The notes below the pieces were generated by a model. That model saw only the letters and a program-made list of their open reading frames with translations. It was not told the DNA's origin and did no database searches. This document shows, in pieces, positions 6,410-18,500 of a DNA stretch of 64,000 bases. A program made the translations under genes and the position numbers. The DNA lies in contig CATNEN010000007.1 in assembly GCA_950097015.1 (NCBI GenBank), positions 2,604,001 to 2,668,000 on the forward strand. The letters are read 5' to 3'. The stretch comes from Macrostomum hystrix. Taxonomy: Eukaryota > Animalia > Platyhelminthes. The first letter of the stretch is position 1; every line of letters begins with the position of its first letter.

Positions 6410-6840
6410 CTCATTGGCTGCCTTATTGGAACAGTTTATCAAAACTCCCTTGATCCTTATTGGCTGCCTTTTAGAACAGTCTATCAAACCTCCCTCGACC
6501 CTGATTGGCTGCCTTATTAGAACAGTCCATCAAGTCTCCCTCGATCCTTATTGGCTGACTTATTAGAACAGTCCATCAAACCTCCCTCGATCCTGATTGG
6601 CTGCCTTATTAGAACAGTTTATCAAACCTCCCTCGATCCTGATTGGCTGCCTTATTAGAACAGTCCATCAAACCTCCCTCGATCCTGATTGGCTGCCTTA
6701 TTAGAACAGTCTATCAAACCTCCCTCGATCCTGATTGGCTGCCTTATTAGAACAGTCCATCAAGCCTCCCTCGATCCTTATTGGCTGACTTATTAGAACA
6801 GTCCATCAAACCTCCCTCGACCCTCATTGGCTGCCTTATA
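6410..6840. repeat. 46 bp minisatellite, each unit carrying ATTGG (CCAAT box)
   Basis: Period 46 measured 6601 to 6647; unit ctgccttattagaacagtccatcaaacctccctcgatcctgattgg. Confidence 0.85.
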
Positions 6841-6900
6841 CAACAGCCAAACAAGGCTTGCGTAACCCCAGAAACATGTTTCGTTACACAGAATATTGTC

Positions 6901-7566
6901 TCAACTGGCGGCAACAGCCTTTTGATGTTTTCCGCCACCATCCGACCGCGCATTCTGTACCCCACTGCCTGAAGCCTCGGCGTCAGCCTCGGAAGCGTCA
7001 ACCTCCGGCAGACGGTCTGCCGGCACGCTGGGCAGCTTGGCGGCCGCTTCGCCAGAATCTGCTAGAAGAGCGTCCAGCTCCGCCTCGCAGGCGGTCTCAT
7101 CCTCGTCAGTCAGCTGACCGCCAGACAGCAGGGCGTCAATCTGGCGCTGATATTCCACTGCCTCCTGGGTCTCGTCCAGCACGGCCTCAACCCGTTCCAG
7201 ACTGAGGAAGGCGTTCAGCTCCTTTAAGGCTTTGTTGCCAGCTTCGAGGCCGGCTACAACCTGGCTCTGCACCTGGGCAAACTCGATGTCCTGCACCAGC
7301 TGGTCCAGATTGTCCAACTGCTGGTCGGTCTTCTCTAGCAGAGTCTCCTGGCGTTTCTTCTTGCGCAGCAGAAGCAGAGCCTTGTCTTTGCGCCCGGCGG
7401 CAATAAGCTTCTTGGCCGTCTCCTTGTCCTTGTTCATCTGGGCATCGACGCGACGCTGATATTTTTTTAGTTCGTCTCGCTGATGCTTCAACTGCAGCAC
7501 TGCTCTGTCCTGCTCCGTCACGGAGCTCGCCTTTGGTGGCTGCCGCTTCTTGCTGAATAGGCTGCC
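6901..7566 (-). CDS. CHMP6: Charged multivesicular body protein 6 (VPS20, ESCRT-III, Snf7 family); coding exon begins at Gly2
   Basis: GSLFSKK..VTEQDRAVLQLKHQRDELKKYQRR..ALLLLRKKKRQETLLEKTDQQLDNLDQLVQDIEFAQVQ..GLEAGNKALKEL matches CHMP6/Vps20. Acceptor ttcactgttcccag| directly precedes GGC AGC; stop TGA at 6903..6901. The source of the initiator Met is unresolved (see findings). Confidence 0.93.
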   Translation of the reverse strand, partial: GSLFSKKRQPPKASSVTEQDRAVLQLKHQRDELKKYQRRVDAQMNKDKETAKKLIAAGRKDKALLLLRKKKRQETLLEKTDQQLDNLDQLVQDIEFAQVQSQVVAGLEAGNKALKELNAFLSLERVEAVLDETQEAVEYQRQIDALLSGGQLTDEDETACEAELDALLADSGEAAAKLPSVPADRLPEVDASEADAEASGSGVQNARSDGGGKHQKAVAAS

Positions 7567-9529
7567 CTGGGAACAGTGAAATAGCATTTAACTTAGTGAC
7601 TTACTGCACCGCGAGATTTTGAAACCTGACACAGCCAGTGCACAGCTGGGTGAACTAAATCACTAGATAATTAAGCATCAGCCACTAAGATACAAACAGC
7701 TAGGATTCGAACTCACGACCTATCAGTCAGAGTAGAATAGTATTTCGGTTCCTAAGATCACAAGTCTGACTAATTAAAACTTTCTAAGTTAAAAGTGCAA
7801 ATAAAAAATAAAAAAATTTGCCGCATATAAAAGTTTTCATTCTTAAACGTATTATATTATAACACACGTCTTCTAAAGTTTGTGTTAGTATAAATAATAT
7901 ATGAATATTAATGACTTTTATTCCGCCTGGGAAACGCAATGTGTCCCTAATTTATCTGGTTTAAGAAAAAAAGAATACATAGAAAAGAAGACAAGTTAAA
8001 TTACAACTGCTGGGAGAGAAAAGCTTTGATTTAGAATGGGATTTGGTTCACAGGATCAGAATGCTTTGGGATTTGCGGGTCATGGCTGCCTCGAAGCAAG
8101 GGGAGAAGCGAGAAATATTTCGGAGACTGTTCAGATACAAATTTTGTTTTTAACGAAATAACACCGACAGCCTGCCAGACGAAACTGTGCATACATAGGT
8201 GATAGTGCATTGGGGAAATAAGAGGAATTGGCCAGAGCTGATGAAGCAATTTCAAGACAGCGGCGTGAATTCCAAGTTTGAGTTGATGGCGAAGTTGGTA
8301 TACGAGCAAGCAAGAAAGCAAGACACGCTACTTGATCATATTTCCCAGGTTTCCAAAAACAAAGCCAGAAAAATTCCTCGGGTAAAGCACACGCACTGCT
8401 ATGTGTTACAAACGCTAGAGTTATATAATATTGGTTGGGGATAGAATCGAAAATAACAAAGACTGTGTTACGGCGGCTTGAGTTACAGGTTCAGACGTGG
8501 CGGGCGGGAGCGGCCGCCCAGATTCGAGGACTGTCCGGTGCTGCAGCTAAATGCACATTAGTTAGTTAGCGCAACGAGGGCCAAAAAGCGTACACATAGT
8601 TTAATTAGTGCATCAGGATTTAAGAGACACACGGACAAGAGACGTAGAAAAAAATATGAAAAACTGTTGATTGTATTAATAATAATTTGAAAATAAGCAT
8701 GCGCTACACTCTGCTCTCTACTAGTTACTAGCTCTCTAGATATCGCATCACGTGCATATAGCCACACACGCACAAGTAGTAAGATGCGAGTTTTCTTTTA
8801 ATTCTTGCTGTACTGGATTAACTTTTTGATTAAAAAGAAAAATAAATAAATGAATAAATAGAGGCTGGCAAAGATTGAGAGAAAATTAAAAAAAAAGTGA
8901 AATTAACCAAAACAAAAACAAAGAACTTGGGGCATGGGGCAGATATCGGCACAAGCATTTAACCGGGACAGATTAATAGAAAAGTTTATAATAGAGTGTC
9001 AGATAAACAAAATATAGCAAGAAAATATTGAAGATATGTGAGCAGTCGGCTAGCAACAGAAACCAAATGAATCATAATAGGGGAAAAGGTTATGTTAGGG
9101 AATCTCACGGAAGACTATCCCACAGAGCTCACAGGTGCATTAATAATAAGTAAGATCAACGGCGTATTAATAAATTAGGTATTCTAAAGACTTTACCAGC
9201 TAGATTTTGGGACAAAACATTCTTAGAAAACGATGACTGAGCCTTCAAGGCTGGGAGCGGGTGCAAAAAACTGAGAGGCGAACAAGCAGCTCACGGTACC
9301 TACATGTATAAATATATGCAAATTTTATAGGCGTTAAAAAACAAACAACAAAACGCTAGCAGTTTTTACGTAGCGCAATTTAACGATACAAAAACTTGAC
9401 TAAAAAGTGAATATAGTTGATCATTTCGTCATAGCGGAGATGCAAAACCAACTTGGCCTTATTTTTTTCTTTCCGAATTTCTGTCTAATATGCTTCAGCC
9501 AGCCAAGACAGTCGTTGAACTCCGAACTA

Positions 9530-12500
9530 TTATTGCTCTCCGTTGTGACCTCGCCGACCTCGACCGCCGCGCTGGGGATCTGAATGACGTAACGAAGAGA
9601 TTCTCAGGATTTCCTCACACTGAGCCCATAATTTCCACATAGATAGCACAGGACTCACCCATACTGAGTCAGGATTCATCCATACTGAGTCAGGACTCAC
9701 CCATACTGAGTCAGGACTCATCCATACTGAGTCAGGATTCATCCATACTGAGTCAGGATTCACCCATACTGAGTCAGGACTCATCCATACTGAGTCAGGA
9801 CTCACCCATACTGAGTCAGGACTCATCCATACTGAGTCAGGATTCACCCATACTGAGTCAGGACTCACCCATACTGAGTCAGGACTCATCCATACTGAGT
9901 CAGGATTCATCCATACTGAGTCAGGACTCACCCATACTGAGTCAGGACTCACCCATACTGAGTCAGGACTCATCCATACTGAGTCAGGACTCACCCATAC
10001 TGAGTCAGGACTCATCCATACTGAGTCAGGACTCACCCATACTGAGTCAGGACTCATCCATACTGAGTCAGGATTCATCCATACTGAGTCAGGACTCATC
10101 CATACTGAGTCAGGACTCATCCATACTGAGTCAGGATTCATCCATACTGAGTCAGGACTCACCCATACTGAGTCAGGACTCACCCATACTGAGTCAGGAC
10201 TCACCCATACTGAGTCAGGATTCATCCATACTGAGTCAGGATTCACCCATACTGAGTCAGGATTCACCCATACTGAGTCAGGATTCATCCATACTGAGTC
10301 AGGACTCACCCATACTGAGTCAGGACTCACCCATACTGAGTCAGGACTCACCCATACTGAGTCAGGATTCATCCATACTGAGTCAGGACTCACCCATACT
10401 GAGTCAGGATTCATCCATACTGAGTCAGGACTCATCCATACTGAGTCAGGACTCATCCATACTGAGTCAGGACTCATCCATACTGAGTCAGGATTCACCC
10501 ATACTGAGTCAGGATTCATCCATACTGAGTCAGGATTCACCCATACTGAGTCAGGACTCATCCATACTGAGTCAGGATTCATCCATACTGAGTCAGGATT
10601 CATCCATACTGAGTCAGGATTCATCCATACTGAGTCAGGATTCATCCATACTGAGTCAGGATTCATCCATACTGAGTCAGGATTCATCCATACTGAGTCA
10701 GGACTCACCCATACTGAGTCAGGACTCACCCATACTGAGTCAGGATTCATCCATACTGAGTCAGGACTCACCCATACTGAGTCAGGACTCACCCATACTG
10801 AGTCAGGACTCACCCATACTGAGTCAGGATTCATCCATACTGAGTCAGGACTCACCCATACTGAGTCAGGATTCATCCATACTGAGTCAGGATTCATCCA
10901 TACTGAGTCAGGATTCATCCATACTGAGTCAGGACTCACCCATACTGAGTCAGGACTCACCCATACTGAGTCAGGACTCACCCATACTGAGTCAGGACTC
11001 ACCCATACTGAGTCAGGACTCACCCATACTGAGTCAGGATTCATCCATACTGAGTCAGGATTCATCCATACTGAGTCAGGATTCATCCATACTGAGTCAG
11101 GACTCATCCATACTGAGTCAGGACTCATCCATACTGAGTCAGGATTCACCCATACTGAGTCAGGACTCATCCATACTGAGTCAGGACTCATCCATACTGA
11201 GTCAGGACTCATCCATACTGAGTCAGGACTCATCCATACTGAGTCAGGACTCATCCATACTGAGTCAGGATTCATCCATACTGAGTCAGGATTCATCCAT
11301 ACTGAGTCAGGATTCATCCATACTGAGTCAGGATTCACCCATACTGAGTCAGGATTCATCCATACTGAGTCAGGATTCACCCATACTGAGTCAGGACTCA
11401 TCCATACTGAGTCAGGATTCACCCATACTGAGTCAGGATTCATCCATACTGAGTCAGGATTCATCCATACTGAGTCAGGATTCATCCATACTGAGTCAGG
11501 ATTCATCCATACTGAGTCAGGATTCATCCATACTGAGTCAGGATTCACCCATACTGAGTCAGGATTCACCCATACTGAGTCAGGATTCATCCATACTGAG
11601 TCAGGATTCATCCATACTGAGTCAGGATTCATCCATACTGAGTCAGGATTCACCCATACTGAGTCAGGATTCACCCATACTGAGTCAGGATTCATCCATA
11701 CTGAGTCAGGATTCACCCATACTGAGTCAGGATTCACCCATACTGAGTCAGGACTCATCCATACTGAGTCAGGATTCATCCATACTGAGTCAGGATTCAT
11801 CCATACTGAGTCAGGATTCATCCATACTGAGTCAGGTTTCATCCATACTGAGTCAGGACTCACCCATACTGAGTCAGGACTCACCCATACTGAGTCAGGA
11901 TTCATCCATACTGAGTCAGGACTCATCCATACTGAGTCAGGATTCATCCATACTGAGTCAGGATTCATCCATACTGAGTCAGGATTCACCCATACTGAGT
12001 CAGGATTCACCCATACTGAGTCAGGATTCATCCATACTGAGTCAGGATTCATCCATACTGAGTCAGGACTCACCCATACTGAGTCAGGATTCACCCATAC
12101 TGAGTCAGGATTCACCCATACTGAGTCAGGATTCACCCATACTGAGTCAGGATTCACCCATACTGAGTCAGGATTCATCCATACTGAGTCAGGATTCATC
12201 CATACTGGGTCAGGATTCACCCATACTGAGTCAGGATTCACCCATACTGAGTCAGGATTCACCCATACTGAGTCAGGATTCACCCATACTGAGTCAGGAT
12301 TCACCCATACTGAGTCAGGATTCACCCATACTGAGTCAGGATTCATCCATACTGAGTCAGGATTCACCCATACTGAGTCAGGATTCACCCATACTGAGTC
12401 AGGATTCACCCATACTGAGTCAGGATTCACCATACTGAGTCAGGATTCACCCATACTGAGTCAGGATTCATCCATAATGAGTCAGGATTCATCCATACTG

Positions 12501-15500
12501 AGTCAGGATTCATCCATACTGAGTCAGGACTCACCCATACTGAGTCAGGATTCATCCATACTGAGTCAGGATTCACCCATACTGAGTCAGGATTCACCCA
12601 TACTGAGTCAGGATTCACCCATACTGAGTCAGGATTCACCCATACTGAGTCAGGATTCACCCATACTGAGTCAGGATTCACCCATACTGAGTCAGGATTC
12701 ACCCATACTGAGTCAGGATTCACCCATACTGAGTCAGGATTCACCCATACTGAGTCAGGATTCACCCATACTGAGTCAGGATTCATCCATACTGAGTCAG
12801 GATTCACCCATACTGAGTCAGGATTCACCCATACTGAGTCAGGATTCACCCATACTGAGTCAGGATTCACCCATACTGAGTCAGGATTCACCCATACTGA
12901 GTCAGGATTCATCCATAATGAGTCAGGATTCATCCATACTGAGTCAGGATTCATCCATACTGAGTCAGGACTCACCCATACTGAGTCAGGATTCATCCAT
13001 ACTGAGTCAGGATTCACCCATACTGAGTCAGGATTCACCCATACTGAGTCAGGATTCACCCATACTGAGTCAGGATTCACCCATACTGAGTCAGGATTCA
13101 CCCATACTGAGTCAGGATTCACCCATACTGAGTCAGGATTCATCCATACTGAGTCAGGATTCACCCATACTGAGTCAGGATTCACCCATACTGAGTCAGG
13201 ATTCACCCATACTGAGTCAGGATTCATCCATAATGAGTTAGGATTTCACAACACTCATTTCTTAATACTGATGTCAGGATTTCTCCAAACTAAGTCGGGA
13301 TTTCCCAATACTAATGCTAGGATTTCCCAATACTAATGCTAGGATTTCCCAATACTAATGCTAGGATTTCCCAATACCAATGTCAGGATTTCCCAATACT
13401 AATGCTAGGATTTCCCAATACTAATGCTAGGATTTCCCAATACTAATGCTAGGATTTCCCAATACTACTGCTAGGATTTCCAAATACTAATGCTAGGATT
13501 TCCCAATACCAATGTCAGGATTTCCCAATACTAATGCTAGGATTTCCCAATACCAATGTCAGGATTTCCAAATACTAATGCTAGGATTTCCCAATACCAA
13601 TGTCAGGATTTCCCAATACTAATGTCAGGATTTCCCAATACTAATGCTAGGATTTCCCAATACCAATGTCAGGATTTCCCAATACTAATGTCAGGATTTC
13701 CCAATACTAATGCTAGGATTTCCCAATACTAATGCTAGGATTTCCCAATACCAATGTCAGGATTTCCCAATACTAATGCTAGGATTTCCCAATACCAATG
13801 TCAGGATTTCCCCATGCTGAGTCAAGGATTCCCCCATGACGCCATCACTGCATTCGCAATCCCAATTAGCATTCAACGGTCAAAACCTACCGCCGCCACC
13901 CCTGGAGGGCATCGGGCGTCGATTCATCGCCGGAAAATCATTGCCACCGTCGGCTGAATCCGTCGCAGATGCGCCCTGCTGCTGTTGCCCACCTCGACGA
14001 TTTCCGCCGCCGCCGCCTCCAGCGTAGCCTCTGTAGGGCCGACGTCCACCGCCGCCTCCGCCACCTCGCCCAGAAGCGATGTGCTGCACTGCCGAATCGG
14101 TGTGGTAGCCTTTCTCCTCCTGGCTGGTGTCGGAGTCGCCGCGGGCAGCGCCGCCTCCGCCTCCGTTTGCCCCGCCGGCGGCCGCGTTGTCATCCCGACG
14201 TTGGTAGGGCAGCTGATGTCCACCGCCGCCGCCGCCGCGTCCGCCGCGACCTCCGCGACCGCCGCGTCTCGGACCACCGCCACCACCACCGCTGCCGTAG
14301 CCACTGTAGCCGCCTCCGTAGCCGCCGCCGCCTCCGTAGCCGCCACCTCCGTAGCCGCCGCCGCCGCTAGCGTAGCCACCAAAGCCGCCTGCGTATCCGC
14401 TACCGCCGTCGCTATCGTAGCCGCCGCCGCGATTCTGCTGGCGCAGCTTAGCGGTCATCTCCTCCCGCTGCAGGGCCAGCTCGTCCACCTGGGCGCGGGC
14501 AAATATGAAATCAAAATGATATGGTCGGTCTTTTCTGCTTTTCCGCTTGACATAAAAATCATAGCAACAAAACCTTACCTGCTTCAGAGTCTCAATGTGA
14601 TAGTCGAGCATAAACTTGGCATTCTCAACGGACTCCTTCGTGCCGATGAAGATGAAGGGCACCATGCCCTCGTCGCCATTGTTTTCTCCGCCGCCAGAGC
14701 CGTCGCCACCAGACGGGGGACGCTCGTCGTCGCCTTCGACGCGAACCCGGATTACGCCGGCCTTGTCAACAATGTCCTGCATTAAATGACGGAGATATCA
14801 AAGCCCGGATGGGTTCCAAGTGTGGGAACTGTAACACTCCGCAATGGATTCCAAGTGGGAACTGTAACACTCCGCAACGGATTCCAAGTGGGAACTGTAA
14901 CACTCCGCAACGGATTCCAAGTGGGAACTGTAACACTCCGCAACGGATTCCAAGTGGGAACTGTAACACTCCGCAACGGATTCCAAGTGGGAACTGTAAC
15001 ACTCCGCAACGGATTCCAAGTGGGAACTGTAACACTCCGCAATGGATTCCAAGTGGGAACTGTAACACTCCGCAACGGATTCCAAGTGGGAACTGTAACA
15101 CTCCGCAATGGATTCCAAGTAGGAACTGTAACACTCCGCAACGGATTCCAAGTGGGAACTGTAACACTCCGCAATGGATTCCAAGTGGGAACTGTAACAC
15201 TCCGCAACGGATTCCAAGTGGGAACTGTAACACTCCGCAATGGATTCCAAGTGCGAACTGTAACACTCCGCAATGGATTCCAAGTGCGAACTGTAACACT
15301 CCGCAACGGATTCCAAGTGGGAACTGTAACACTCCGCAATGGATTCCAAGTGCGAACTGTAACACTCCGCAATGGATTCCAAGTGGGAACTGTAACACTC
15401 CGCAATGGATTCCAAGTGGGAACTGTAACACTCCGCAACGGATTCCAAGTGGGAACTGTAACACTCCGCAATGGATTCCAAGTAGGAACTGTAACACTCC

Positions 15501-18500
15501 GCAATGGATTCCAAGTGCGAACTGTAACACTCCGCAATGGATTCCAAGTGGGAACTGTAACACTCCGCAATGGATTCCAAGTGGGAACTGTAACACTCCG
15601 CAATGGATTCCAAGTAGGAACTGTAACACTCCGCAATGGATTCCAAGTGGGAACTGTAACACTCCGCAATGGATTCCAAGTGGGAACTGTAACACTCCGC
15701 AATGGATTCCAAGTGGGAACTGTAACACTCCGCAATGGATTCCAAGTGGGAACTGTAACACTCCGCAATGGATTCCAAGTGGGAACTGTAACACTCCGCA
15801 ATGGATTCCAAGTGGGAACTGTAACACTCCGCAATGGATTCCAAGTGGGAACTGTAACACTCCGCAATGGATTCCAAGTGGGAACTGTAACACTCCGCAA
15901 TGGATTCCAAGTGGGAACTGTAACACTCCGCAACGGATTCCAAGTGGGAACTGTAACACTCCGCAATGGATTCCAAGTGGGAACTGTAACACTCCGCAAC
16001 GGATTCCAAGTGCGAACTGTAACACTCCGCAACGGATTCCAAGTGCGAACTGTAACACTCCGCAACGGATTCCAAGTGCGAACTGTAACACTCCGCAACG
16101 GATTCCAAGTGGGAACTGTAACACTCCGCAATGGATTCCAAGTGGGAACTGTAACACTCCGCAATGGATTCCAAGTGGGAACTGTAACAACATGCGGGCA
16201 ACTGGAACAATGAAGCCTTTGTCTAACAATGCTGCAGTGTAAGTGCAGCGCACCTGAATATTATTTCCGTTCTTGCCGATGACCCGGCTAACTAGCACTC
16301 TGGGGACTCTGTAGGCCTCCTCCGTGTACTCCAGGAGGGCGCGGGCGCGCCGGCAGGCTTCGGGGTTGTCGCCGTAGATGCGAAATACGCCACGCTCTTC
16401 GTCTAGTTCAACGCCGGTGACGCCTGGCAGTTGGCGGGCCTGCGAATTGGGGAAGATAATATGAAGGGAGATTGAATTTAATTGATTCCCTATTTGGAAG
16501 GACTGACGGACACAGCAGGACATTACATAGAGCTGGTCACTGACTCAAATAGAGAGTCTCTATGTCCTCTACACAACACTGTAGATGCAAGATTATGAGG
16601 CAATAATCTTTCCTAATAGGGGGATAATATCCGGAAAAATTTTAAATGGGGTATTTATCCTCCCATATCGGGGAATTATCTTTCCTAGTTGCAGGATAAT
16701 CTTACATTCTGGGGATAAACTCACCTAAACAGGGGATATGGTCACCTTATTTGGGCGGCTAATATTTACTTATCGGGAATTAAAACTCCCATTTAGAGGA
16801 AAAGCCTCAGAATTAAGGGAATATTCTCTCATACTGTGATAATATGCTCTAATTAGTGCTAATTAGTGGATATTCTCCTCTAATCAGGGTAAAATCGACT
16901 TAAAGATAGTAATTTCTATACTATAAGTATAGTTTTACTCCTAATATGATTAATTTTCCACATGTCAGCCACTATCCACTGGAAATGCATTAAAAATGTG
17001 GCCCACCTGTCCAATATTGGACCCCTGCGAGCCGATAGCCAGACCAATAAAGGAGGGAGGCACAGGGAACTCCTCCATGAGCTGGCCGCCGGACACGTGG
17101 GTGTGCTCAAGCCGCCTGGCCAGCTCATCTGTTCGCTGCTTAAGCAGGCACTTCTGTCGCAGGCCGCGCAGGAACAGCTCTTCGATCAGTGACAGCCGGT
17201 TGATGTCCGATTCGTCGGCGGATAAGACGCTCAGGCGGGTGCCACTGACCAGGATCAGGTAGGGCGAGCGGAACCTGGTTCACCGGGTGGGGTGGCGGGT
17301 TGGCTGCTCTGAGTTTATTACAACTCATTGCTCTATGGCTGCGACAGGGAGCCATAAGACAGCTAACTCGTGGAGAAGGACGGGGGATAGACAGGGAGGA
17401 AAGGTCATAGACAAGACAGGGAGGAAGGGTCATAGAAAAAACAGGGAGGAAGGGTCATAGACAAGACAGGGAGGAAGGGTCATAGACAAGACAGGGGGTA
17501 AAGTCATAGACAAGACAGGGAGGAAGGGTCATAGACAAGACAGAGAGGAAAGGTCATAGACAAGACAGGCAGGAAAGGTCATAGACAAGACAGGCAGGAA
17601 AGGTCATAGACAAGACAGGGAGGAAAGGTCATAGACAAGACAGGGAGGAAGGGTCATAGAAAAGACAGGGAGGAAAGGTCATAGAAAAGACAGGGAGGAA
17701 GGGTCATAGACAAGACAGGCAGGAAAGGTCATAGACAAGACAGTGGGTTAAGTCATAAACAAGACAGGGAGGAAGGGTCATAGACAAGACAGGGTGGTAA
17801 GGTCATAGACAAGACAGGGAGGAAAGGTCATAAACAAGACAGGTTGGTATATTCATAGACAAGACAGGGAGGAAGGGTAAAATACAAGAGGGTAATGTAT
17901 GGGGATAGACAGGGATGAATGGGGATAGGCAGGGATGAATGGGGATAGACAGGGATGAATGGGGGATAGACAGGCATGAATGGGAATAGACGGGGTAGAA
18001 GGTTGATAGACAGTGAGGAACTGGGGGAAGGGGCATCAAAAGATTCGGGATATACTTGGGTGAGATAAGCAAGAAGGTACAGATGACACTAACCGCAGCA
18101 TAATTAGATAACATGAAAGAAGGCAAGGGATGGTGAGAATGTAAAGGTGGCATCGCAAAATGCGTCACTAACCTGCGCACAAGGTCGCCATAGATCTCGG
18201 GATCGCTAACCCGATCGGCCACCTCGTGAGGCACGGTGATGTCGCGCCTGTACAGTCTGACACCGGCAAGCGGCTTGGCAGCTCCGTGCAGCCGGACCCT
18301 GGTCCGCTCCACCACATCCTGGGCGCTGTTGTGTTTGAAGGCACATACAACAAAGTCGCCTTTGACACTGCGCACAGTGGCGGGCCACCAGCAGGCCTCA
18401 GAGGCGTTCAACACTTCGACTTCGTCATTCTCAGACAAAGAGGATTGCACGCAGCTGCCGCCATACACAAAAGCATCAGTCAGTGGCATGGTGGCGAGTT

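What the first reader, a model, noticed from the sequence alone, without database searches (positions are those of the whole stretch)
7560..7600. CHMP6 has no start codon of its own at Gly2: the AUG may come from a trans-spliced leader and complete the myristoylation signal
Seen: on the minus strand a 3' splice site (ttcactgttcccag) is followed directly by GGC AGC CTA TTC AGC (G-S-L-F-S). By eye I found no ATG|GT or ATG|GC donor (accat/gccat on the plus strand) in the ~2 kb up to the FMR1 stop. Known: CHMP6/Vps20 is N-myristoylated (MGxxxS), and flatworm spliced leaders end in a conserved AUG reported to act as an initiator in schistosomes. Inference: SL-AUG plus this exon gives MGSLFS, an exact myristoylation motif. 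The only genomic in-frame ATG (7587, MLFHCSQG..) sits inside the acceptor region and would bury Gly2. Trans-splicing would then decide whether the protein is lipidated and membrane-targeted.
Basis: partly seen in the sequence, partly recalled or inferred. Interest (0 to 1): 0.82.

Follow-up and report, generated by a model that had tools for sequence, protein, structure and literature searches.

The report
Spliced leader supplies CHMP6 start codon
In this Macrostomum-like flatworm the membrane-remodelling gene CHMP6 has no start codon of its own; RNA data show that a trans-spliced leader ending in AUG is joined exactly in front of its glycine-2 codon, a confirmed new example of a mechanism already known from schistosomes.

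Summary

- **Gene:** On the minus strand, a single-exon CHMP6/Vps20 gene (6904-7566) begins at a GGC that aligns with Gly2 of every orthologue compared.
- **Upstream sequence:** The GGC is preceded by a pyrimidine-rich tract and an AG (7568-7567). I found no ATG|GT or ATG|GC donor up to 9650.
- **RNA evidence:** Assembled RNA contigs from three runs of one study end their genomic match at 7567. They continue with 24 letters that, together with the shared G, equal the last 25 nt of the Macrostomum lignano spliced leader, which ends in ATG. The mature mRNA therefore reads ...UUGCAUG|GGC AGC CUA UUC AGC, giving MGSLFS.
- **Start codon:** The leader's AUG is the first AUG of the mRNA. The genomic ATG at 7587 lies in the discarded outron, which no contig covers.
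- **Upstream gene:** The roughly 2 kb upstream is mostly the 3'UTR of the FMR1-like gene, which ends about 300 nt before the acceptor. This is an operon-like layout.
- **Not tested:** Translation from the leader AUG and myristoylation are inferred. I found no evidence that trans-splicing acts as a lipidation switch.

The mechanism is known (Cheng et al. 2006, schistosomes), so this is a new member of a known kind. First readers of this scan proposed the same for at least eight other genes of this genome; those notes are unchecked.

The parts
6904..7566 (-). CHMP6/Vps20 coding exon, Gly2 to the last residue (221 codons, no introns)
   Evidence: ORF; Pfam Snf7; CHMP6 orthologues; covered by RNA contigs
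6901..6903 (-). stop codon TGA
7567..7568 (-). AG of the trans-splice acceptor; the leader is joined between 7567 and 7566
   Evidence: Loose ends at 7567 in X4, X5 and X6 equal the SL 3' end
7569..7588 (-). pyrimidine-rich tract before the acceptor (14 of 20 C/T)
7585..7587 (-). only genomic in-frame ATG; it lies in the outron and is removed by trans-splicing; an in-frame TAA sits just upstream at 7588-7590
   Evidence: no contig covers 7568-7641
7568..7862 (-). outron / intercistronic spacer (about 295 nt); contains short pieces of a dispersed repeat at 7642-7675 and 7698-7731
   Evidence: tables 2 and 8
6684..6900 (-). CHMP6 3'UTR as far as contigs reach; overlaps a 46-nt tandem repeat
7863..9529 (-). 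3'UTR of the upstream FMR1-like gene
   Evidence: One contig runs from 7863 to 9580 and continues into upstream exons; the stop lies at 9530-9532
9530..9579 (-). last coding exon of the FMR1-like gene (RGG-rich tail plus stop); cis-splice acceptor at 9580-9582
   Evidence: The same loose end at 9580 in all four runs; Agenet and KH exons further upstream

Best explanation
CHMP6 in this flatworm is made from an SL trans-spliced mRNA. The pre-mRNA is probably a read-through of the FMR1-like gene, whose mRNA ends about 300 nt upstream. It is cut at the AG at 7568-7567, and the roughly 35-nt spliced leader, which ends in AUG, is ligated directly to GGC (7566). The leader AUG is the first AUG of the mature mRNA (nt 33-35) and is in frame, so translation gives MGSLFSKK.... 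After removal of the Met, Gly2 is exposed in a consensus N-myristoylation context, as in CHMP6/Vps20 of other eukaryotes. Shown here: the junction, the leader sequence, the frame, and the absence of any other usable AUG. Inferred: initiation at the SL AUG, myristoylation, and polycistronic transcription.
For:: in three RNA contig sets (X4, X5, X6; samples S4-S6, one study) the contig matching 6684/6791-7567 continues with ATGCAATAAATTGAGTCTTCGCAG on the plus strand; the reverse complement of that, plus the shared G, is an exact substring of the M. lignano SL given in PMC8629364, running to its terminal ATG. The modelled mRNA has its first ATG at nt 33 and translates to MGSLFSKKRQPPK. The runs are RNA: all four show the same splice junction at 9580 and none covers 7568-7641; every orthologue starts MGxLF/MGxxF, and the window's exon starts at the aligned Gly; the closest relative, M. 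lignano BOX15_Mlig015664g1 (75% identity), is annotated 'partial' and starts at the same Gly (GSIFSKK). That annotation cut gene models at sites where SL-trimmed reads map (PMC5730564). SLs are reported as highly conserved among Macrostomum species, and the terminal ATG is described as a likely start codon; use of the flatworm SL AUG as initiator is documented in S. mansoni (Cheng et al. 2006; SmSirt7); query residues 14-49 match the Vps20 peptide of PDB 3htu, so the N-terminal region is a conserved, functional part of the protein.
Against: The contigs are assemblies (Logan), not raw reads, and come from a single study, so minor isoforms would be missed. The -3 position of the SL AUG is U (a weak context), so some leaky scanning to Met45 is possible. 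There are no protein-level data. In the public M. lignano assembly the Gly codon is preceded by ATG and not AG. Taken at face value, that would mean the arrangement is not conserved.
Confidence: 0.85

Rival explanations
1. A cis-spliced upstream exon ending in ATG supplies the start codon.
For: None was found. The only argument is that short 5' exons are easy to miss.
Against: There is no ATG|GT or ATG|GC on the minus strand from 7567 to 9650. The region from 7863 to 9580 is the 3'UTR and last exon of the FMR1-like mRNA. The contigs in three runs carry the SL at the junction and show no joint to any upstream place (table 5).
Confidence: 0.02
2. A share of transcripts stays unspliced and is translated from ATG 7587, giving MLFHCSQG... 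with a buried glycine. This would be a non-myristoylated isoform, so trans-splicing would act as a lipidation switch.
For: ATG 7587 is in frame, 21 nt upstream. Contigs drop rare variants (caveat).
Against: There is zero contig coverage of 7568-7641 in all four runs. The seven extra residues have no counterpart in any orthologue. The nearest upstream RNA is the end of the FMR1-like 3'UTR, so an unspliced RNA would be an uncapped or polycistronic precursor with upstream out-of-frame ATGs at 7840, 7826 and 7678.
Confidence: 0.05
3. The mRNA is trans-spliced, but ribosomes skip the SL AUG and start at Met45, giving a truncated, non-lipidated protein.
For: The SL AUG has U at -3 and lies only 32 nt from the cap.
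Against: Residues 2-44 are conserved from this worm to vertebrates. They include the region matching the Vps20 peptide of PDB 3htu, so they must be translated. Between the window and M. lignano the first codons differ by conservative or synonymous changes. In schistosomes the SL AUG is used as initiator.
Confidence: 0.06
4. The SL-exon junction is an assembly chimera of the contig builder.
For: The SL is shared by thousands of transcripts, and graph assemblers can mis-join at repeats.
Against: The two sides share only one base (G), far less than a k-mer. The same junction appears in three separately assembled runs. The junction falls on a canonical AG and exactly at the conserved codon 2.
Confidence: 0.02

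Closest known systems
Flatworm SL 3'-terminal AUG used as initiator methionine (Cheng, Cohen, Ndegwa & Davis 2006, J Biol Chem 281:733; cited in PMC9851317, PMC12582326 and PMC5832876)
   Same: The SL ends in AUG, is joined in frame directly to an ORF that lacks its own start, and the conserved N-terminus is restored only with the SL Met.
   Different: That case was described in Schistosoma mansoni, where more than 40 cDNAs are said to need it. This one is in a free-living macrostomid, with RNA junction evidence but no translation assay.
SmSirt7 of S. mansoni (PMC3772001)
   Same: A single named gene whose initiating ATG is provided by the SL.
   Different: A different gene and a parasite. The N-terminal residue has no lipidation role there.
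slORFs (slORFfinder, PMC9851317)
   Same: An ORF created or completed by a start codon carried in the SL.
   Different: slORFfinder relies on ribosome footprints, and none are available here.
CHMP6 / Vps20, the N-myristoylated ESCRT-III nucleator (Yorikawa et al. 2005, Biochem J 387:17, title cited in PMC4772496)
   Same: Snf7 domain, MGxLFxKK N-terminus, a region similar to the ESCRT-II-binding Vps20 peptide (3htu), and 50-60% identity to animal CHMP6.
   Different: In the other animals compared, the annotated protein starts with its own Met. Here the Met codon is not in the gene.
M. lignano BOX15_Mlig015664g1 (P0001)
   Same: 75% identical, intronless, downstream of a KH-domain (FMR1-like) gene, and the model starts at the same Gly and is flagged partial.
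   Different: The assembly reads cttgcATG|GGC, with no AG. That assembly was polished with RNA-seq, so the T may have come from SL-bearing reads (the true sequence would be cTTGCAG|GGC). This is unresolved.
SL-resolved operons of M. lignano (PMC8629364)
   Same: The downstream gene is SL trans-spliced, on the same strand, with a spacer of about 300 nt. This is below the 1 kb threshold used there.
   Different: No polycistronic precursor was seen in the contigs.

Membership tests
SL-AUG-initiated mRNA (flatworm SL terminal AUG as initiator) | The organism has an SL that ends in AUG | tested here: met
   The loose end at 7567 plus the shared G equals the last 25 nt of the M. lignano SL, ending in ATG
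SL-AUG-initiated mRNA (flatworm SL terminal AUG as initiator) | The SL is joined directly and in frame to the ORF | tested here: met
   The junction is ...TTGCATG|GGCAGC in three runs; the modelled mRNA translates to MGSLFS
SL-AUG-initiated mRNA (flatworm SL terminal AUG as initiator) | No other in-frame AUG in the mature mRNA upstream of conserved residues | tested here: met
   The first ATG of the modelled mRNA is at nt 33 (the SL); the next in-frame one is Met45
SL-AUG-initiated mRNA (flatworm SL terminal AUG as initiator) | Ribosomes initiate at the SL AUG | not testable with these tools
   This needs ribosome profiling or N-terminal proteomics. It is inferred from conservation of residues 2-44
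CHMP6 / Vps20 | Snf7 (ESCRT-III) domain with best similarity to CHMP6 orthologues | tested here: met
   PF03357, E 7e-37. Among the named top hits nearly all are called CHMP6 or Vps20, at 50-60% identity
CHMP6 / Vps20 | N-terminal MGxxxS myristoylation motif | tested here: met
   GSLFSK fits the PROSITE-type pattern, but only with the SL Met in front
CHMP6 / Vps20 | The protein is actually N-myristoylated | not testable with these tools
   This needs metabolic labelling or mass spectrometry
CHMP6 / Vps20 | N-terminal helix that binds ESCRT-II (Vps25/EAP20) | tested here: inconclusive
   There is sequence similarity of residues 14-49 to the Vps20 peptide of PDB 3htu (E 2.6e-7). Binding was not tested
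SL-resolved operon | Same-strand neighbours, downstream gene SL trans-spliced, spacer under 1 kb | tested here: met
   The FMR1-like contigs end at 7863-7878 and the acceptor is at 7567; the criterion is from PMC8629364
SL-resolved operon | A polycistronic precursor RNA spans both genes | tested here: inconclusive
   No contig bridges 7568-7862. Contigs miss rare precursors

The most novel reading that the evidence does not exclude
CHMP6's dependence on the leader AUG is conserved across Macrostomum (and perhaps more widely in flatworms) and is used for regulation. The extent of trans-splicing, or TMG-cap-dependent translation, would set how much lipidated ESCRT-III nucleator a cell makes. A minor unspliced or Met45-initiated product would act as a non-membrane-bound variant.
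Probability: 0.07. Interest if true: 0.6.

Novelty: new member of a known kind. Interest (0 to 1): 0.35.

Why it matters
This is an RNA-backed case outside the parasitic flatworms in which a conserved, functionally important N-terminus exists only after trans-splicing. The N-terminus here is the lipid anchor signal of the ESCRT-III nucleator.

In practice, genome annotators will call this gene 'partial', as in M. lignano, or extend it to the wrong ATG at 7587 and bury Gly2. Pipelines for SL-bearing species should add the leader AUG before calling ORFs.

It also flags a possible polishing artefact at trans-splice acceptors in the RNA-polished M. lignano assembly.

Biologically it adds little that is new, because the mechanism has been known since 2006.

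Tried and rejected
- **SL RNA gene in the window:** I searched for the SL 3' end plus donor with up to 3 mismatches and found none. The leader therefore comes from elsewhere in the genome.
- **tRNA and Rfam scans of the outron:** both were negative, despite a T-arm-like GGTCGTGAGTTCGAATCC.
- **Alignment with the M. lignano upstream region:** 380 nt upstream shows no clear homology beyond the last roughly 40 nt, so no conserved promoter or outron element could be defined.
- **'SL fossil' idea for M. lignano:** I considered that a retroposed or cDNA-converted copy of the leader lies before the M. lignano gene. The anchored similarity score is 12. Only 2 other distinct sites among about 4,100 ATGs scored (the three M. 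lignano loci are near-copies of one another) reach that score. I set the idea aside in favour of a simpler explanation. That assembly was Pilon-polished with RNA-seq, and a single inserted T would turn a consensus acceptor TTGCAG|GGC into TTGCATG|GGC. I could not decide between the two here.
- **Exact-sequence look-ups:** I looked up M+P0001 and the window protein to find transcript contigs; nothing is on record.
- **Supplements of two SL papers:** I searched them for CHMP6. The only hit was 'snf7-related' Smp_070030, listed as trans-spliced in S. mansoni, and its subfamily is unknown.
- **Papers not held:** Cheng 2006 and Yorikawa 2005 are not in the library. They are cited through papers that quote them.
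- **A fuzzy-regex script:** it timed out and I replaced it.

Full report
**What is in the sequence.** On the minus strand the window reads ...aaATGctatttcactgttcccAG|GGC AGC CTA TTC AGC....
- The AG is at 7568-7567, the GGC at 7566-7564 and the ATG at 7587-7585.
- An in-frame TAA lies at 7590-7588, directly before that ATG.
- The ORF 6901-7587 is intronless and carries a full Snf7 domain (PF03357, E 7e-37).
- Its best named relatives are CHMP6/Vps20 of animals at 50-60% identity. The closest relative is a Macrostomum lignano protein at 75%.
- In the alignment, all nine non-Macrostomum orthologues start MG(x)LF/MGxxF. The window's glycine at 7566 aligns with their Gly2, and the seven residues MLFHCSQ encoded between ATG 7587 and the AG match nothing.
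- A script found no ATGGT or ATGGC on the minus strand between 7567 and 9650. 14 of the 20 bases before the AG are pyrimidines.

**RNA evidence.** One search found seven runs holding the stretch. I laid four of them on 6500-9650. All four are kept as assembled contigs.
- They are RNA. Every run shows the same splice junction at 9580, and none covers the stretch 7568-7641.
- In X4, X5 and X6 (three samples of one study, contigs at least 99% identical to the window), the contig matching 6684 or 6791 to 7567 continues with 24 letters that lie on nothing in the window.
- On the plus strand these letters read ATGCAATAAATTGAGTCTTCGCAG.
- Their reverse complement plus the G shared with the acceptor is an exact substring of the 35-nt M. 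lignano spliced leader printed in PMC8629364. It runs to the leader's terminal ATG.
- The mature mRNA therefore reads ...UUGCAUG|GGCAGCCUAUUCAGC.
- With the full leader modelled in front of the exon, the first ATG is at nt 33 (the leader's own). It is in frame and gives MGSLFSKKRQPPK. The next in-frame Met is residue 45.
- No joint to any upstream exon was reported (table 5).

**Surroundings.**
- A single contig runs from 7863 to 9580 and continues into upstream exons. The reading frame stops at 9530 after an RGG-rich tail.
- Exons further upstream carry Agenet and KH domains. This is the FMR1-like gene, and the '2 kb spacer' is mostly its 3'UTR.
- Its contigs end at 7863-7878, about 295-310 nt before the CHMP6 acceptor.
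- By the criterion used for M. lignano (same strand, downstream gene trans-spliced, spacer under 1 kb), the pair would count as an operon. No precursor contig spans the gap, so co-transcription is only inferred.
- The same gene order (KH gene, then CHMP6) is found at three M. lignano loci.

**How it most likely works.**
- Shown: the acceptor is used for SL trans-splicing; the leader ends in AUG; the junction is in frame; the mature mRNA has no other AUG before conserved residues.
- Inferred: ribosomes start at the leader AUG. Three things support this. Residues 2-44 are conserved from this worm to vertebrates. They include a stretch similar to the Vps20 peptide of PDB 3htu. The flatworm SL AUG is a documented initiator in Schistosoma mansoni (Cheng et al. 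2006 as summarised in PMC9851317; SmSirt7 in PMC3772001).
- Inferred: after Met removal, G-S-L-F-S-K is a substrate of N-myristoyltransferase. It fits the pattern G-{EDRKHPFYW}-x(2)-[STAGCN]-{P}. Human CHMP6 is described as myristoylated (title of Yorikawa et al. 2005, cited in PMC4772496; the paper itself is not held).
- I found no support for a 'switch'. The outron ATG at 7587 is absent from all contigs, and an unspliced RNA would be a precursor carrying upstream out-of-frame ATGs at 7840, 7826 and 7678. Without trans-splicing there would most likely be no protein rather than a non-lipidated one.

**Comparison with M. lignano.**
- The M. lignano protein is annotated 'partial' and begins GSIFSKK, at the same codon.
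- That annotation cut gene models at places where SL-trimmed reads map (TBONE pipeline, PMC5730564). This argues that the M. lignano mRNA is trans-spliced at the same point.
- Yet the assembly reads cttgcATG|GGC at all three loci, with no AG. The about 20 nt before GGC resemble the leader's 3' end. Its anchored score is 12; only 2 other distinct sites among about 4,100 ATGs scored reach that score (the three M. lignano loci are near-copies of one another).
- The assembly was polished with Pilon using RNA-seq as well as DNA reads.
- The simplest reading is that the true sequence is cTTGCAG|GGC, a perfect match to the reported [T/C]TNCAG trans-acceptor motif. SL-bearing reads would then have introduced one T.
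- A real genomic ATG, or a leader fragment copied in through cDNA, is not excluded.

**What is known, and novelty.**
- That flatworm leaders end in AUG and can donate the initiator Met has been known since 2006. More than 40 S. mansoni cDNAs are said to require it.
- A full-text search for spliced leader, myristoyl and AUG together gave four papers; the one I opened (PMC3772001) does not link the two, and the titles of the other three are on unrelated topics.
- So the CHMP6/myristoylation twist appears undescribed. It follows automatically from the known mechanism for any MG... protein.
- First readers of this scan proposed the same mechanism for NDUFA5, SFMBT, PPP2R3C, DPH7, NSA2, HYI, NUDT12 and a nuclear receptor in the same genome. 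These are unchecked, but they suggest the phenomenon is common here.

**Organism.** The runs and organisms are coded, so I do not name the species. The closest public protein and the 25-nt identity to the M. lignano leader point to Macrostomum or a close relative.

**Limits.**
- The contigs come from one study and cannot show minor isoforms, exact 5' or 3' ends, or expression levels.

**Verdict.** This is a new, well-documented member of a known kind and of moderate interest.

Noticed in passing
L004:9975-10003 (also L005 and L006, same coordinates; L001-L003:3975-4003): In the public M. lignano assembly the CHMP6 Gly codon is preceded by cgatttacttgcATG, which resembles the SL 3' end, and there is no AG. 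That assembly was Pilon-polished with RNA-seq, so SL-bearing reads may have written a T (or more) into a true TTGCAG acceptor. If this is general, trans-splice acceptors in that assembly may be systematically altered.
   Followed up: partly
L004:14381-14406 (-), L005 ATG ending at 14124 (-), L006 ATG ending at 14136 (-): An SL-like stretch (GCTGCTAAGACAAAATTTATACATG followed by CGTAAAG) lies about 3.5 kb downstream of M. lignano CHMP6. It has the highest similarity to the leader among about 4,100 ATG contexts scored. It may be a decayed SL RNA gene or another polishing trace.
   Followed up: no
window 9649-13245, 13257-13812, 14809-16189: Three long, very regular tandem arrays sit inside introns of the FMR1-like gene: 21 nt x 171 copies at 96% identity, 22 nt x 25 copies, and 33 nt x 42 copies at 97% identity. 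The 21-nt unit contains TGACTCA and a GGTGAGT donor-like motif.
   Followed up: no
window 6413-6846: A 46-nt tandem repeat (9.5 copies, 91% identity) covers most of the CHMP6 3'UTR and runs past its end. Each unit carries CTAATAAG, and the longest contig ends at 6684, about 15 nt after one such motif.
   Followed up: no
window 7642-7675 and 7698-7731: Two 34-nt pieces in the CHMP6 outron match contigs of other transcripts at 90-95% identity, so they belong to a dispersed repeat. The neighbouring sequence has a tRNA T-arm-like GGTCGTGAGTTCGAATCC, but ARAGORN and Rfam find nothing.
   Followed up: partly
window 9139 (27-nt deletion in X4), 8167, 8197, 8932, 8958-8959, 9176, 9215: Allelic differences in the FMR1-like 3'UTR appear between runs, including a 27-nt indel. 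This points to polymorphism among the sequenced worms.
   Followed up: no
window 7598-7603 (-): GTAAGT, a donor-like hexamer, lies 31 nt upstream of the acceptor AG (gcaGTAAGTcac). It would define a 37-nt mini-intron, but the RNA contigs give no sign that it is used.
   Followed up: no
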